From the NCBI GenBank assembly GCA_965644265.1, contig OZ286475.1, positions 15,500,001 to 15,564,000 on the forward strand: DNA of 64,000 nt, in the 5' to 3' direction. A program made the translations under genes and the position numbers. Positions 13,567 to 21,205 of the stretch are shown here, one piece after another. The DNA is from Glycera tridactyla (Eukaryota). How positions within the stretch are numbered: the first letter of the stretch is position 1; every line of letters begins with the position of its first letter. The notes beneath the pieces were generated by a model that saw only the letters and a list, made by a program, of their open reading frames with translations, did no database searches and had not been told where the DNA came from.

Positions 13567-14161
13567 AGTTAATTACCGTACCTGTCTCTCCCTCAAATTC
13601 TGCATCGCCAATGCTCAACTACCTACATACGAACATTAAAACAATATAAAAACTATTCAGGGGTGTACCCGACTGCTGCAGCTATATCACCATCTAGGAT
13701 AAAGCGCTCTTCGTATTTTCTCAATTCGGCCATTTCGAAAGGTTCTGAGAAAATTCCCTCGTCGATTTATTGATTATTTCGGATGCTTAACTATATACGC
13801 CTACATCGTAGTTTGCTTGGATATACTGCGTTAGTATCAGGATACTGTATATAGGCGTTAGGAGTGTTAATCGCTCTGTAGAGCTTCTACGGCTACAAAC
13901 TTGTTACCATTGAGCGCGCGCTTGTGCGTACGCTCTGTTTCGGAAATTGTTGTTTGTACGGCTGTCAATGAGCGCACTCTCGTGCGTTTGCTCGTGTTGG
14001 GTACTGGTTGTTTACGTTGCCCGGCATACCATACTATCAGCACGATGTATGCACACACCTTTGAAATGGTCCGCTCTTGAATGAGTGTAGACCTGTGATT
14101 TTCATATCAGTGCATTGTTGTTGTTGAAAATTGTATTTGTTTATTGTATATTGCATTTGAC

Positions 14162-17063
14162 ATGTCAAGCAGAAAGGGGCAATGTGGGCATTTCCTTGCG
14201 GGTTGGGACTTGCATGATTACTGCCCCTTCTGTAGAGATTGTGGTAGGAGGAGGGACGAGGACGGTGAGGATTTCGTATGCAATGTATGCGAGACATGGG
14301 ATGACGCCATAAAAGAGTCGTCATTATGCGCGTACGGGGTCGTCCTCGAGTCCTAAAAGGTTCTCGTCTGTGGCTAGCCCATCTGGAGATACGTCCGATA
14401 GGTCCCCTTGTCAAATGCGAAGCAAAGGGTCACCGAAATCGAGAAAGACCCTACCGAAGAAAGCCCCCATTTTTCCAGAGGAAACAGATGTGGCTTCTTC
14501 TTCTCGCGAGTTGGTTGGAGGGGGTGTAAAATCAAAAAAGGGTATGTTTCCCCCCAGATCAGAACCAACATCACCATCACAATTGAATAAACCTGTTCAC
14601 AAACCATCATCACCTAAATCTGTTTCTCATGTTAATGTGGATGAAGATTCCTTCAGACCCCCCTTAGATCCAGCAGGAATAAAGTGACTGGCTAGGAGCA
14701 AAGGGTAAATTCCTCAGGCAGAAGCAGTGGTTTTGTTATCGGTGAATGCTGTGACTGATGGATCTGCACCCTTGACAAAGAGGTTACAAGGTAGGGATCC
14801 GAGTGATGTCTACCAAGGGTCTGAGTCTGTAGAGAAGACTCTGGGCAAGACACTCTCAAAATCAACTCAGTCAAAGGGAGATATTGCTATGGGCTCAGGG
14901 CACCATACATCTCAACCAGCAATTGAACAGTTCTTAGAACGGTTTCCAATTCTCACCAAGCTAAAGAGTAGAGAAAAGTAGGGGTCGGTCCAAGGACCGG
15001 GCATCGGGCACGGACCGGGCTCCGGGCACAGAGAAGGGTGAGCAGGTCAGAGAACTGTCAAAGGACCGGGTACCGGGCAAGCACCAGGCACCGGGCAGTG
15101 AGAGTAGCTTGGACAGGTCCAAGGACAAGTCAGGGGGCGCCCACAGGGCGAGCACGGGGCACCAGGCAGTGACAGCTGTGTGGATAGGTCGAAAGACATA
15201 GTTCACTCAGAAGATAAGTCACAGGGCGCTCACAGGGCACCCGGCAACCACGGGGCACAGGGCACTGGGAAGAGTGCACACAAATCTAAGGAGGTTTCTC
15301 AGTCCAAGGGCCAACCAGACACCGGGCAGCGGGGCTCCAGGGCACCTGATACCATTGCTAAGGCTCCCACTAAGTCTGGGAAGGATCCTTCCAAAGAGAC
15401 CAGTGTTAGTCCACCTAAGAAGTCTAGGGCTACTCCCTCAGTATGGGACAATCAGAGGAGTAGTGTAGGGGTGTTGCCCACAGTTCATGAAGCTTCTGAA
15501 CCTGAGGAATCGAGTTCAGATAATGAACCGGATATTTTGCCAACTCAGATTTTCGGTTCAGGGTCAGACTGTAACCCACATGAAAGGTTGTTCAGATTAT
15601 TGTATGATAAGCTTCCACCAGTGAAGGTTAGAGTTCAGACCGGCGCAGAGAGACAGGTCTTCACCAGAGAACAGAGTCATAGACCAGAATCTTCAAGTGG
15701 TAGATCCGATATCAGGAAGAGAAAGATTTCAGTGGCAGGATATTCAGATAATGAGTCAGATCGTTCATCTCTTAAGAAGGTGAAACGGCCTCCTGAATGG
15801 TGGGCACGTATGAGGCAGATAAGAACCCCTGAAACTGTTTTGAGACCCCAAGAGGCTGATCAAGTGGATCAGATTCCTATCCAACCTGACGATGAGGAGG
15901 AGAGAATTGATCAAATGGTAGAAAATAAATCTACAAATGCCCTTATTCATAGCCTCAGGCAGGAGATCCTTAGCCTTCGCAAGGAAGTGAAGGAGACCAA
16001 GGATCAGAATACTCCTCCTGCGGATCCAGAGGAGAAAGAGTCAGAAAATCCGGCACAGATCAGAAGGTTACAGACCTTTCGTAGATCTGCCTCAGAGCTC
16101 TCACCCCACTACATGGGTACTCCAGATCCTTCAGAAGTTGAATTTTCGGGTATGTCAACTGATATGTTGAAAACCGCTCATCCTAAACAGGTTCAAGATG
16201 AAGAGGTGGATAGGTTGATTGATACAACGCTCCCATGGTCACCACTTATATTGAATGTCATGACATTCTTAGATGAGAATCTTCAAGGCAGGGAAAAACG
16301 TCAACCAAAGATCCCAGAGGATTCACCTCTGGAGGACTTTGTGGCAGGAAAAGGGGGCAAAACAGAGGCTTTAACAAGAGTGTTCAAGCCTAACTTTCCA
16401 ATTGTCATTGGATGCAATCCCAGAGTATATAAGATTCGACCACCACCAGATCAACCAGAGGGTTATCTAGCAGTGCCATCTGAGATAGACGTCAATTATG
16501 ACAATTGGGGAAAATCTTCGAAGGCAGAGCTGAAGGCCTCGCCTGAGGAGATAATGCTTAAGGATTCCCTGAAAGTGTTGTCCTACGCGGATGTGGCATT
16601 AGCTGCAACTATTAGGTCAACACACGAGGATGTAGCAGACTCACCAGATGTCCCAGAAAAAGCGCAAATGTCCATGGACATAGGCCTCAAAGCAATAGAA
16701 CATGCTACGTATATTGTAGCTAAGGTAGCAGGCAACTTAGAACTACAAAGAAGAACTGTGGCCTTGAAGACAATGAACGTGGATGACACGGCAAAGGCAC
16801 AGGTAAGATCCTTACCTCTAGGCCAGAAGTACTTGTTTGGGGGTAGGTTAGAGGAGGCCGCTGATGAGTCAATGGAGAGATCTGAAAAGAGACGAAACAT
16901 GGAATATGATTTCAGAATGGGTTTCTCTCCTGTTGTTTCCAAGAACACATCTCAGCAGAAGGACCAGAAAACTCAGTCCAAATCTGCATCTCGATCAAGG
17001 GGTGGTTCTTGGAGAGGTCGTGGTAGGGGCAGAGGTGCAGGACGTTCTTATGAGGAATCTTAG
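14162..17063 (+). pseudogene. DIRS gag-like ORF1 (frameshifted; longest open piece 15180-17063)
   Basis: N-terminal Cys/His cluster CGHF...DLHDYCPFC...CNVC..W and C-terminal LELQRR...LPLGQKYLFGGRLEE followed by an RGG tail, typical of animal DIRS ORF1. Broken into four ORFs. Confidence 0.75.
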
Positions 17064-17139
17064 TCCCAAAATTACTACCAGCCACAGCAGCAGCAACAAC
17101 AGCAACACCAGCAACATCAGTATAGTCAGGCTCAGAACA

Positions 17140-18730
17140 AATCAGAGCGCAGACCTTATGGCAAAAGAGGGGGTCGGGGCAGAGCCCGTAGGCCCTAGGA
17201 TGAGGAGCGCCTCTCTCTCATCACAATGTGTGGGGGCCAGGCTGGCTCAATTTCTACCAGCCTGGCAGACTCTGACCGGGAACAGATTTGTTCTATCTAT
17301 AATCAAAGACGGGTTGACACTCAATTTCAACAACCCTGCAAATCTATCGAAGAAGTTTCTTCCATTCAAGGGACCCAAATCCGGGTCTCTGAAGTCAATA
17401 GCCCTCCTGGAAGAAATTCAGAAGATGCTAGAGAAACAAGCGGTTATCAAATTGTCACCAGATTGCAAAGAAGGTTACTACAGCAATCTCTTTCTGGTGG
17501 CCAAAGCATCAGAAGGATTCAGGCCCGTGATCAACCTAAAACCGTTCAACAGGTCGATCCACAATCAAAAATTCACAATGGAGACGGTCAGGTCTGTTGT
17601 GAAGGCAGTGCTCCCGGGGGATTGGTCAGTCTTAATCGACATCCCGGACGCTTATTTTCATATTCCCATTCACAAGGACCATCAGAAATATCTTTGTTTT
17701 GCGGTGTCAAGCAAAGAAGCCTACCAGTTTCGGGCACTTCCGTTCGGCCTCTGCTCGGCACCGTGGATATTTACGATGGTCCTGAGGGAGCTGGCACAGC
17801 ACCTTCATATGAAGGGAGTGAAAGTACATTTGTACTTAGACAATTGGCTCATTTGTCACCAGAATGGTCAGATATTGATGGAGCACCTGGAGTATGTCAT
17901 CCAGATTGCCATACAATTAAAGTGGATTGTCAACGAGGAAAATTCAGAGCTCGTTTCTCGTCGGCAATTCACCTATCTGGGTGTCGATTTCGACACCCAG
18001 ACTCAGACAGTTTCTCCGACCGAGAGGAGGATTCTCAATCTCGAGTCTTGCATCAACCTGTTCCTCAGGAGACCATGTCAACCAGCAAGGGCAATATTGC
18101 GCCTCCTGGGACACATGTCAAGTTTATCAGATTTTGTGAGAGTAGGCAGACTACACATGAGACCGATTCAGGTTTGCCTATTATCCCGTTGGAGACCACA
18201 TATAGACAGTCTGGAAATAATGATAGATTTTCCACAGGAAATTTCAGAGATCTCAGCCTTGTGGTAGAATAGAGAAAACACGATGTCAGGAGTGCCATTA
18301 TCTCTGCCGGATCTAGACATCACAGTCACAACCGACGCATCTTCGTCAGGTTGGGGAGCCCAAATTGTGGGTCCAGATTTCAGGGACCAGATCTCGGAAG
18401 ACTGGCCATCGAGTTACGAAGGAAGGTCTATAAACTCGTTAGAGTTAGAGGCGGTGTTGTCGGCTCTAGAAGCATTCCATCTATTGATCCAGAACAACAC
18501 TGTCATGATACTTTCAGACAACATAACCACGATAGCGTACATAAAGAATCAAGGGGGCACGCACAGCACACTACTTTGTGGCTTGGCGTGGCAGATTTGG
18601 ATGTTTGCAGAGGCCAGAAACGTCACTCTGAGAGTGAACCATATTCCGGGCAAGCAAAACATGGTCGCAGACGCGTTATCGGGAGCCCAACCTATTCAGA
18701 CAGAATGGGAACTTCACCCCCCATATCTTT
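17140..18730 (+). pseudogene. DIRS reverse transcriptase and RNase H
   Basis: GYYSNLFLV..RPVINLK, IDIPDAYFHIPI, ALPFGL, LYLDNWL (YLDD variant), TTDASSSGWG, INSLELEAV, SDN, HIPGKQNMVADALS. Stop at 18265-18267. Confidence 0.95.
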
Positions 18731-18754
18731 CGGAACATTTTAGAGTGGTTCCAA

Positions 18755-19171
18755 GTGGATCCACTAGTGGATCTGATGGGCACACATCAGAACAAGAAGC
18801 TGCTAATCTTTGTGAGCCCTGTCCCGGACCCAGCCGTACTAGCGGTAGAAGCCCTCTCTCTGCAGTGGAACCAGTTTTCCATAGCTTACGTCTTTTCACT
18901 GACAGCTCTGATTCGGGAGACTCTTGACAAGATCAGAGAATCAGAGATCATTCTGATATGTGTGGCTCCCTGGTGGCCGAACCAGGCGTGGTTCCCGGAT
19001 CTGTTGGAACTATCCGTGACCAACCCAGTGGAGCTGCCGACGCCGAGAGACATTTTGACCCAGGTTGTGAAGGGGAAGAGGCTGAACCATCACAAGCCTC
19101 AGGTCCTCAACCTTCACGCCTGGTGTTTATTAGGCAAGCCCTTATCAACAAAGGCTACTCGGCTGAGGTAG
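18755..19171 (+). pseudogene. DIRS DNA N6-adenine methyltransferase-like domain
   Basis: DLMGTHQNKKL..FVSPVPDP.VLAVEALSLQW...YVFSL...APWWPNQAWFP is the domain found after RNase H in DIRS1 elements. The expected YAFPP motif is degenerate. Confidence 0.8.
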
Positions 19172-20940
19172 TCCGCAGAATCGCGGCACCCCCCAGGGAG
19201 TCCACAAACCGAATATATGACGCGAGATGGGAAGTCTGGGGCCAGTGGTGTAGGGACAATAGGATTGATCTGATCTCTGCACCTCTGGTCTCAATAGAAA
19301 ATTTCTTTCTGTTTCAATGGGACAAGGGTAAAGGTCTGGAAACTCTCAAGGGCTATAAGTCTGCCCTGGCTTCAGTATTTTCCTTGTATGATAATCCAAT
19401 ATTAGATTCAATGGATATCAAGAGACTCTTCAAGAATTTTGCATTGGAGAGACCTGTTCAAAGGAAATTGGTTCCCACTTGGAACTTGCCATTAGTTCTT
19501 TTTTTTCTAAAGAAAGAGCCGTTCAATGACTTCGAACAGCTGTCTTTAGAGAATTTGTCCCTGAAAACTTTTTTTTTCTGATAGCGCTCGCCTCAGGAAG
19601 GAGAAGGAGCGAGCTTCATTCTGCGTTCTGGTTTACTAGAAGCAGTACGTTTTTCTAGAGACAAATCCAAAGTAACTTTAACTTCCTCGCCAGGGTTCTT
19701 GACAAAGAACCAGAAACCAGATGAAGGGACACCCTTTATAGAGATCCCCCCCCCCAGGATTATTTATTTAACCTGGGGATCTATACTTACCATTTCTCCC
19801 TCAAATTAAGCATTCCCCAGGCCGAAGTGCCTACTAGCGAACATTACAACAGTATAAATTTCAATTGGAGGATGTGACCTCCCTCCAACCTCCTCTTCCA
19901 CTAGATGGTGGTGTATGTCAACACCACCACTAGAGGTTGGAGCGACCGTCCTGTGTATCTGCATATTTCTCAACTTCGCGCCATTGTGGCAGGTTGAGAG
20001 ATACCCGGGCTTGCAGAAAATATCATTTTATGCTCGCCTACGGCGCTTCATTAGATCTTTTTTCGCTTATCTATCTGGATATAGATCATTCACATTTGGA
20101 TCTGTGCGGAATTAGCACTTGATTGCGTTTGCGAACTATATATTGACTGTAATTGTTTGTTTACGTTTGCTATAGCAGGATCGCTGGACAGTTATAGCGT
20201 GCGCTGCCCGCCGCAACAAGTGGTTGCCGTGAGCGACGGCTTGTGTACCGGCCGCTGTCAGCGGTCCCGGTCTTCGCAGATAGACGATAGTTATTGTTTG
20301 TTTACCAGAATTGATTACCAGGAGCGTCGGCTTGTGTTTTTGGCAGCCGTCAGCGGTCCCTGTTTCGGCGAAAATCATTGCTTGTTCACCAGAATGTCAC
20401 TATTCACACGATGTTATATTGTTGTAATGTTCGCTAGTAGGCACTTCAGCCTGGGGAATGCTTAATTTGAGGGAGAAATGGTACAGATAGATCCCAGCGA
20501 TCCCGAGACATAGTGAGGAAGTTGAAGTTAGCAATGAGTTTTATCCCGTTAGGGCACTTGAAACATATCTCAGAAGGACAGCTGCAATCAGAGGAAATAG
20601 GAGACGCCTGTTTATTCCTTTAGGGGGATCTCAAACATCTGAGATTAGAATAGACAGAGTGTCTGGATGGATCAGTCAGCTCATTTTGATAGCTTACCAT
20701 ACCAAAGGTGAACATGGTCAGGATAACGTGTCAGCACATGAGGTGAGAGCATTATCTGCATCATGGACTCTATTCAATAGGTCAACATCAGTTCACGAGA
20801 TAATGCAAGCTGCATTTTGGGGGTCTAGCAACAGGTTTGCTACTTTTTACCTCCGTGATATGTGTGGGCAGGCGATGAACCTGTATTCTTTGGGTCCAAT
20901 TGTGGCAGGACAGTCTGTCATCTGTCCACCTTCACAGTAA
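19130..20940 (+). pseudogene. DIRS tyrosine recombinase, split by a 747-bp insertion
   Basis: LASGRRRSELH and TKNQ before the insertion; FYPVRALETYL, AHEVRA and FWGSSNRFATFY after it. Removing 19749-20495 restores ...PFIEIP-AIPRHSEE... in frame. Confidence 0.9.
19749..20495 (-). mobile_element. Non-coding mini-element with DIRS-type termini
   Basis: 75-bp inverted repeats at 19776-19850 and 20421-20495 (4 mismatches), terminal hairpin CCAGG-ATTATTTATTTAA-CCTGG, and AGATCCC on both sides (19742-19748, 20489-20495). Confidence 0.9.
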
Positions 20941-21205
20941 TATTACTGTGAATATTTAGGGTGATTAGAACATGATGTTCTTTTCAATTAGTCCCTCCAT
21001 CTCCGTTTTATGCGGATGAAGAACTTGAGGGAGAGACAGGTACAGTAATTAACTAATTCCGGGTTTATTTAACCCGGATGTTGATACCTACCTGTCTCTC
21101 CCTCAAAAGATGTACCCTCCCATCCGTCCCGGCTAATTGTTGTTAAATACGAGGAGCGCATGCACGCTCGACGCTATGTTAGCGCAGTTGATCCGACACA
21201 GATAA

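What the first reader, a model, noticed from the sequence alone, without database searches (positions are those of the whole stretch)
19742..20495. 747-bp ORF-less, ICR-less mini-DIRS inserted at a 7-bp site identical to its own ends
Seen in sequence: 75-bp inverted repeats (19776-19850, 20421-20495) share TCTCCCTCAAA with the host DIRS ends and show the same asymmetry (TACTTACC versus CTGTACC; host TACCTACC versus CCGTACC). An extra terminal hairpin has the same TTTATTTAA loop as the host ICR hairpin at 21059-21077. Read on the minus strand, it has a DIRS left end and the right end predicted from an ICR, but no ORF and no internal ICR. AGATCCC flanks both sides and is part of the element end, and excision restores the YR frame. 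Established: DIRS elements integrate from a circle by recombinase exchange at a short shared core, and the ICR is thought to be needed to regenerate the ends during reverse transcription. Inference: this may be a MITE-like parasite of a sister DIRS family, possibly moved as DNA by the recombinase alone. Here it has knocked out a recombinase gene.
Basis: partly seen in the sequence, partly recalled or inferred. Interest (0 to 1): 0.72.

Follow-up and report, generated by a model that had tools for sequence, protein, structure and literature searches.

The report
Single-copy deleted DIRS retrotransposon remnant
A 747-base gene-less leftover of a DIRS-type jumping gene is inserted precisely into the recombinase gene of another DIRS copy. 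It is a one-off, not a mobile mini-family, though its ends are swapped relative to its interior compared with almost all full-length relatives.

Summary
More than 20 paralogous copies of the host DIRS family read TTTATAG-AGATCCC-AGCG at this spot. The window has 747 extra bases, with AGATCCC at both junctions (19742-19748, 20489-20495).

The insert has 82-nt inverted arms (94%), a 28-nt terminal hairpin, no ORF and no internal complementary region (ICR). The hairpin is the canonical DIRS "right extension".

The MITE-like reading is not supported. The deletion junction is unique in the 2.04-Gb assembly. Every other match is an end of a 7.7-8.2-kb DIRS element; the nearest are 90% (C17) and 85% (C32) identical.

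New point: the insert is right extension + R-type terminus + 197-nt ITR + first ~440 nt of the 5' leader + 82 nt of ITR ending in the L-type terminus. Full-length relatives put the L-type terminus next to the leader (673 pattern hits against 5). So this is not a simple internal deletion.

Best reading: a short, ICR-less product was integrated once by the family's recombinase through the shared GATCT core. I infer that its ends were rebuilt on a plus-sense ICR supplied in trans. Inversion plus deletion after insertion remains possible.

An earlier scan note (s1-354297) reported the same GGATCT core on other DNA.

The parts
19742..19748 (.). Left copy of AGATCCC (reverse complement GGGATCT). It is shared by the target and the element's circle junction; GATCT is the part constant in the family.
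   Evidence: Empty paralogous sites hold a single AGATCCC. GATCT stands at both junctions of L041, L042 and the mini. Fifteen left ends all begin GATCT after varied flanks.
19749..19777 (+). Right extension (rE): C run plus hairpin, stem CCCCAGG/CCTGGGG, loop ATTATTTATTTAA. In full-length relatives it sits outside the right ITR and in the centre of the ICR.
   Evidence: Query positions 9-66 match the ICRs of L041, L042 and L043 at 93-95%. The rE is defined in PMC3266345.
19778..19974 (+). 197-nt ITR that begins with the R-type divergent terminus GATCTATACTTACC and ends ...TCAAC.
   Evidence: Matches both ITRs of L041 and L042. The ITR boundary was set from the young element L074, whose ITRs are 193 nt and identical apart from the termini.
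19975..20417 (+). First ~440 nt of the 5' leader (U5) of the parent family, in plus sense, with two ~92-bp direct repeats (20218-20271 and 20309-20363). No ORF.
   Evidence: Continuous alignment of mini 36-676 to the left end of L041 (90%) and 37-665 to that of L042 (85%). Repeats. ORFs and RT/RNase H orientation of the relatives.
20414..20417 (.). Deletion junction with 4-nt microhomology TTAT between leader position ~440 and ITR position ~82.
   Evidence: Alignments to the L041 leader and ITRs. The junction is unique in the genome.
20414..20495 (-). 82-nt inverted arm ending in the L-type divergent terminus (GATCTATCTGTACC on the minus strand).
20489..20495 (.). Right copy of AGATCCC.
18958..19746 (+). 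N-terminal piece of the host DIRS tyrosine recombinase ORF. It holds the box I region ALASGRRRSELH, out of frame here, and ends ...TPFIEI.
   Evidence: The intact paralogue's nearest named Atlas clusters carry PF00589. Pfam itself gave no hit.
20491..20940 (+). C-terminal piece of the host recombinase ORF. It begins IPAIPRH and holds HEVRALSAS (H-x-x-R) and ATFYLRD (candidate catalytic Tyr).
21015..21106 (+). ICR of the host DIRS element, with the central hairpin CCGGGTTTATTTAACCCGG. No right ITR follows it.

Best explanation
This is a single, dead-end, internally deleted derivative of a DIRS1-like retrotransposon lineage that integrates at GATCT.

Shown:
- Exactly 747 bp were added at one AGATCCC in the recombinase ORF of an older, different DIRS copy.
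- Both element termini are complete.
- The junctions have the form expected from tyrosine-recombinase exchange between a circle junction (...CCTGGGG-GGGATCT-ATCTGTACC...) and a target that shares the core. There is no target duplication.
- The piece is rE + R-type terminus + whole ITR + 440 nt of leader + 82 nt of ITR with the L-type terminus. The leader therefore sits next to the opposite terminus from almost all full-length relatives.
- Only one copy exists.

Inferred:
- During one replication cycle of a parent element, reverse transcriptase jumped from position ~82 of the right ITR to position ~440 of the leader, through TTAT. This gave a short cDNA without an ICR.
- The normal in-cis route, in which cDNA ends anneal to the minus-sense ICR of the same cDNA, was then impossible.
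- The ends were instead completed on a plus-sense ICR in trans. The most likely template is the skipped, uncopied part of the RNA. This yields a circle junction of opposite polarity.
- The parent family's recombinase, acting in trans, integrated that mini-circle once. It has not moved or multiplied since.
For: - Precise insertion: 23 contiguous empty paralogous sites among 25 fetched, and a paralogous contig that skips 747.
- Parent family: L041 and L042 are 7.7-8.1 kb with RT/RNase H ORFs. Their ICR is [reverse complement of the left end]-GATC-[rE + R-type terminus].
- GATCT stands at both junctions of three independent insertions and at 15 of 15 left ends.
- Single copy: the junction search is unique, and no second short L/R pair occurs in 76 fetched loci.
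- Polarity: 15 of 15 fetched left ends carry the L-type terminus next to the leader.
- Genome-wide exact patterns: L+ITR+leader 673 hits, R+ITR+leader 5 hits including the mini.
- No fully flipped full-length element: the 4 other R+leader hits and the 7 L+spacer hits never share a contig.
- 4-nt microhomology at the deletion junction.
[quoted passage not shown] Integration goes through a short shared junction sequence without duplication (PMC3266345).
Against: - There is one example only, so the order of events cannot be read from it.
- In Dictyostelium an ICR-less DIRS-1 gave no retrotransposition (PMC7192593). Rescue in trans would have to be rare.
- Microhomology fits end-joining deletion in the chromosome as well as template switching.
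- The immediate parent is not in the assembly; the best relative is 90% identical.
- I could not fetch the four other R+leader loci, so I do not know whether they are also ICR-less.
- Two units with the 3' spacer next to both ITRs show that other aberrant architectures exist.
- The C run is 10 long, against 6-8 in relatives.
Confidence: 0.55

Rival explanations
1. An ordinary full-length element of this lineage integrated here, with its L end at 20495 and its R end plus rE at 19749. It was later rearranged in the chromosome. Recombination or a replication template switch between its 197-nt inverted repeats turned the interior round. A ~7.3-kb deletion then removed everything from ITR position 83 to leader position 441.
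For: Internal deletions of resident elements are common. The ITRs are long inverted repeats. The 4-nt microhomology fits end joining. Both the host copy and the insert are old: about 7-8% and 10% from their nearest relatives. That leaves time for two events.
Against: It needs two independent events in one element. Complete interior flips were not seen: no R+leader hit pairs with an L+spacer hit on the same contig, against 673 and 282 normal ends.
Confidence: 0.27
2. One reading: a MITE-like non-autonomous element that the recombinase of a sister DIRS family moves as DNA, by excision as a circle and re-integration, without reverse transcription.
For: Both recombination sites are intact, and the target shares 7 bases with the circle junction. 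Cut-and-paste would keep the copy number at one, so a single copy does not strictly exclude it.
Against: No second copy, no sibling with the same junction and no family exist. No footprint or empty allele of this locus was seen; the one contig that skips the insert is a 5% diverged paralogue. No excision activity is documented for DIRS recombinases in the papers read (PMC7192593, PMC3266345).
Confidence: 0.08
3. Assembly artefact: a collapsed or chimeric join of two DIRS ends.
For: The family has well over a thousand copies. The public runs found do not cover the interior 19894-20379.
Against: Both junctions are exact to the base at one target heptamer inside a continuous host ORF. A misjoin would not reproduce that. 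The runs were very small (2-81 million letters), so their silence means nothing.
Confidence: 0.03

Closest known systems
DIRS1-like retrotransposons (Cappello 1985 model; Poulter and Goodwin; Piednoel et al. 2011, PMC3266345)
   Same: ITRs with a short divergent terminal part. A right extension present only at one end and in the ICR. A circle junction that shares a short core with the target. No target duplication. A preference for inserting into other DIRS copies.
   Different: No ORFs and no ICR. Only 747 bp. The leader lies next to the R-type end instead of the L-type end. The shared core is 5 bases (GATCT; 7 in this insertion) rather than the 3 usually reported.
SIRE / VIPER of Trypanosoma cruzi (described in PMC6681497, citing Vazquez et al. 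1999, 2000)
   Same: A short ORF-less element made of the 5' and 3' parts of a tyrosine-recombinase retroelement. Its origin (central deletion) and its mobility are debated.
   Different: SIRE is a described repeat family and belongs to the split-direct-repeat VIPER group. The element here is one copy of an ITR/ICR-type DIRS1-like lineage.
Experimental ICR-less and truncated DIRS-1 constructs (Malicki et al. 2020, PMC7192593)
   Same: An element lacking the ICR, or lacking the coding capacity for GAG, RT and RNase H. Both were reverse transcribed into cDNA in the experiment; for the truncated construct the endogenous RT acts in trans.
   Different: The ICR-less construct did not complete retrotransposition. 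The natural piece here is integrated with complete termini, so either it was rescued or it lost its ICR afterwards.
MITEs and non-autonomous deletion derivatives of DNA transposons
   Same: Short, ORF-less, terminal inverted repeats, derived from an autonomous element by internal deletion.
   Different: No amplification, no target site duplication, and termini of recombinase type rather than transposase type.

Membership tests
DIRS1-like retrotransposon (as a derivative) | Inverted terminal repeats with a short divergent outer part | tested here: met
   82-nt arms at 94%. The termini GATCTATACTTACC and GATCTATCTGTACC are the same as in L041, L042, L074 and L076.
DIRS1-like retrotransposon (as a derivative) | Right extension found at one terminus only and repeated in the ICR of relatives | tested here: met
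   19749-19777 matches the ICR centres and right ends of L041-L043 at 93-95%.
DIRS1-like retrotransposon (as a derivative) | Internal complementary region | tested here: not met
   Only the two terminal copies of the terminus motif occur in the window. The relatives have an ICR about 45 bp inside the right ITR.
DIRS1-like retrotransposon (as a derivative) | Gag, RT/RNase H and tyrosine recombinase ORFs | tested here: not met
   No ORF in the insert beyond chance ones. Relatives carry RT/RNase H ORFs.
DIRS1-like retrotransposon (as a derivative) | Integration without target duplication through a core shared by circle junction and target | tested here: met
   The empty sites hold one AGATCCC. 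The ICRs of relatives show one GATC at the junction. Flanks of 15 left ends differ up to GATCT.
DIRS1-like retrotransposon (as a derivative) | L-type terminus adjacent to the 5' leader and R-type terminus plus rE at the 3' side | tested here: not met
   In the mini the R-type terminus plus rE adjoins the leader. The normal arrangement has 673 hits, the swapped one 5.
MITE-like / non-autonomous mobile family | Several copies with the same internal structure at different sites | tested here: not met
   The junction is unique. There is no other full-length match to the 754 bases.
MITE-like / non-autonomous mobile family | Evidence of excision or circles (empty allele, circle junction reads of the mini) | tested here: inconclusive
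   Only three very small runs were available. The contig that skips 747 is a diverged paralogue, and the 'goes back' joints are ICRs of other elements.
Tyrosine recombinase (host ORF that was hit) | R ... H-x-x-R ... Y catalytic motifs and kinship to PF00589 | tested here: inconclusive
   The motifs ALASGRRRSEL, HEVRA and FYLRD are seen in the intact paralogue. The nearest named Atlas clusters carry PF00589. Pfam and PDB sequence scans gave no significant hit.

The most novel reading that the evidence does not exclude
The swapped ends may be a natural record of how DIRS ends are rebuilt. Normal elements use the minus-sense ICR of their own cDNA. A cDNA that lost its ICR by a template jump can still be completed and integrated if a plus-sense ICR is available in trans: the uncopied template RNA or another element's plus strand. 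That would leave the opposite junction polarity as a signature. The three or four other loci with rE + R-type terminus next to a leader would then be further ICR-less products. If so, ICR-less DIRS derivatives are rescuable, and terminus polarity reports which ICR strand was used.
Probability: 0.3. Interest if true: 0.6.

Novelty: new variant of a known kind. Interest (0 to 1): 0.4.

Why it matters
DIRS replication is the least understood among retrotransposon orders. The role of the ICR rests on one sequence-based model and one experimental paper.

A naturally integrated, ICR-less piece with complete but swapped termini bears on two questions. Can ends be templated in trans? From which strand?

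It also adds three independent junctions and 15 left ends showing that this lineage uses a 5-base GATCT core.

As a genome feature it is ordinary: one dead fragment inside another dead element.

Tried and rejected
- Simple internal deletion of a normal element was rejected: the leader is contiguous with the R-type end, not the L-type end.
- Derivation of the right arm from an ICR half was rejected: the arm has 82 nt of ITR, while ICR halves hold only 34-38 nt.
- Fold-back self-copying was rejected: it would give two R-type ends with rE on both sides.
- Recombinase exchange between circle junction and ICR was worked through on paper. It gives L-L and R-R circles or inversions that do not match.
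- Pfam and PDB sequence scans of the host recombinase gave nothing significant.
I did not try to read them by other means.
- The sequencing runs found were too small to test the locus.
- The phrase 'non-autonomous DIRS' occurs in no held paper, and two wider searches turned up no non-autonomous DIRS1-like family.
- I built no joined or mended recombinase sequence. The two pieces were only compared with an intact paralogue.

Full report
**What is there.** The window comes from a 2.04-Gb assembly in 207 pieces, evidently an animal genome. From about 13567 to 21106 it holds an old DIRS1-like element.
- Its parts are a left ITR, ORFs with RT (PF00078, 2.7e-19) and RNase H-like matches, a tyrosine-recombinase ORF and an ICR at 21015-21106.
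- No right ITR follows the ICR.

**The insertion.** More than 20 paralogous copies of this host family read ...CCCTTTATAGAGATCCCAGCGATCCCGAG... without interruption.
- In the window the same sequence is split after AGATCCC by 747 bases that end in a second AGATCCC (19742-19748 and 20489-20495).
- A contig in a small public run, about 5% diverged and therefore a paralogue, skips exactly these 747 bases with 7 ambiguous letters.
- The intact paralogue L047:200-2341 reads ...KGTPFIEIPAIPRHSEEV.... The window's two pieces end ...TPFIEI and begin IPAIPRH..., in the same frame.
- The ORF carries the motifs ALASGRRRSEL, HEVRA and FYLRD, and its nearest named Atlas clusters carry PF00589. Pfam and PDB sequence scans were silent.
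- The host ORF is also frameshifted at about 19570-19640, so the insert is not its only lesion.

**Anatomy of the insert.** The arms are 19776-19857 and 20414-20495, 82 nt, 94% complementary. Comparison with the genome gave two full-length relatives.
- They are L041 (C17, about 8.1 kb, 90% identical) and L042 (C32, about 7.7 kb, 85%). Both have RT/RNase H ORFs.
- In coding orientation they begin GATCTATCTGTACC... (L-type terminus).
- They end ...GGTAAGTATAGATC followed by a 28-nt hairpin extension (R-type terminus plus right extension, rE).
- Their ICR, about 45 bp inside the right ITR, reads [reverse complement of the left end]-GATC-[rE + R-type terminus].
- These are the canonical DIRS1-like features described by Piednoel et al.: divergent ITR part, rE, and ICR halves overlapping at the circle junction (PMC3266345).

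The young element L074 fixes the ITR at 193 nt, ending ...TCAAC. After that point the left side continues TTCGC... (leader) and the right side GAG... (spacer before the ICR).

The insert therefore consists of:
- rE, 19749-19777;
- ITR with R-type terminus, 19778-19974;
- the first ~440 nt of the leader in plus sense, 19975-20417;
- 82 nt of inverted ITR ending in the L-type terminus, 20414-20495.

The leader and the short arm meet at a 4-nt microhomology, TTAT. There is no ICR and no real ORF.

**Integration site.** GATCT stands at both junctions in L041, L042 and the mini, while the ICR holds it once. Fifteen left ends from across the genome all begin GATCT after unrelated flanks; the preceding base is G in 7, A in 7 and T in 1.
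- The constant shared core is therefore GATCT. In this insertion two further G happen to match, giving GGGATCT = AGATCCC.
- This agrees with the published no-duplication model (PMC3266345, PMC7192593) and with an earlier scan note on other DNA of this genome (s1-354297).
- The mini's C run is 10 long, against 6-8 in relatives.

**Copy number.** A 111-base query across the deletion junction found only itself. All 19 candidates were scored, and each stops at or starts from the junction.
- Among the scored matches to the whole 754 bases, none but the window itself covers both ends.
- No second short L/R pair occurs in any fetched locus.

**The new point: swapped ends.** In the mini the leader is contiguous with the R-type terminus and rE, and the L-type terminus is on the far side. 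All 15 fetched leader-bearing ends carry the L-type terminus. Exact patterns over the whole genome gave:

| Pattern | Hits |
|---|---|
| L-terminus + ITR + leader (normal left end) | 673 |
| R-terminus + ITR + leader (swapped) | 5, including the mini |
| R-terminus + ITR + spacer (normal right end) | 282 |
| L-terminus + ITR + spacer (swapped) | 7 |

- Three of the four other R + leader hits also have the rE stem upstream.
- No swapped left end shares a contig with a swapped right end, so no fully flipped full-length element was seen.
- A simple internal deletion of an ordinary element therefore cannot give the mini.

**Mechanism.**
- Shown: a precise recombinase-type insertion of a complete-ended, ICR-less, swapped-polarity piece, present once.
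- Inferred: in the accepted model the ends of the minus-strand cDNA are completed on the ICR of the same cDNA, and the ICR is needed after first-strand synthesis (PMC7192593).
- A template jump from ITR position ~82 to leader position ~440 gives a cDNA with ITR sequence at both ends and no ICR.
- Its 3' end can still pair with the ITR-like half of a plus-sense ICR, for instance on the skipped and therefore uncopied part of the RNA.
- Working through the strands, extension there adds the complement of R-type terminus, rE and L-type terminus. After closure this gives exactly the mini's circle, of opposite polarity to normal.
- The family's recombinase would then integrate it in trans; in Dictyostelium the DIRS-1 proteins that complete retrotransposition act in trans (PMC7192593).
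- The main rival is inversion between the ITRs plus a 7.3-kb deletion after insertion. It needs two events, one of which was not seen in about 680 elements, but it cannot be excluded from one locus.
- DNA-only mobility remains untested.

**Limits.**
- The public runs were too small to test the locus.
- The organism is coded.

**Verdict.** The MITE-like interpretation is not supported. The piece is a one-off defective derivative whose unusual polarity is a modestly interesting lead on DIRS end regeneration.

Noticed in passing
G000 C26:40445462-40445657(-), C34:25511113-25511307(+), C40:18803002-18803205(-), C28:103334628-103334823(+): Four other places where an R-type terminus is followed by ITR and 5' leader, the same swapped polarity as the mini. 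Three have the rE stem upstream. It is unknown whether they are short or full-length.
   Followed up: partly
G000 C11:8720458-8728795 and C7:70458898-70465966: Units of 7-8 kb with normal L and R termini but the 3' spacer next to both ITRs, a mirror-like architecture. Five further L-terminus + spacer ends lie at C10:70545716, C18:71477285, C32:30380629, C32:75943922 and C51:65248153.
   Followed up: no
L075:9226-9295 (G000 C1:5078600-5088100): A right end with rE is followed directly by an L-type left end. The circle-junction sequence therefore lies in the chromosome: a tandem copy or an insertion exactly at a resident element's end.
   Followed up: no
L043:480-1560 (G000 C7:119225200-119235199): The ICR and a shortened right ITR of one element lie about 170 bp before the left end of another element of a related family.
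   Followed up: no
window 13567-21140: The host DIRS copy has no right ITR after its ICR. It has frameshifts in the recombinase ORF near 19570-19640, at a T run.
   Followed up: partly
window 20218-20363 and relatives L003-L023: The 5' leader of this DIRS lineage holds ~92-bp tandem repeats whose number varies among copies. Query part 451-680 matches again just beyond 37-598 in most relatives.
   Followed up: no
whole genome: The R-type terminus motif occurs about 2,860 times. It is typically paired about 244 bp apart (ICR and right end), so this DIRS group has well over a thousand copies.
   Followed up: partly
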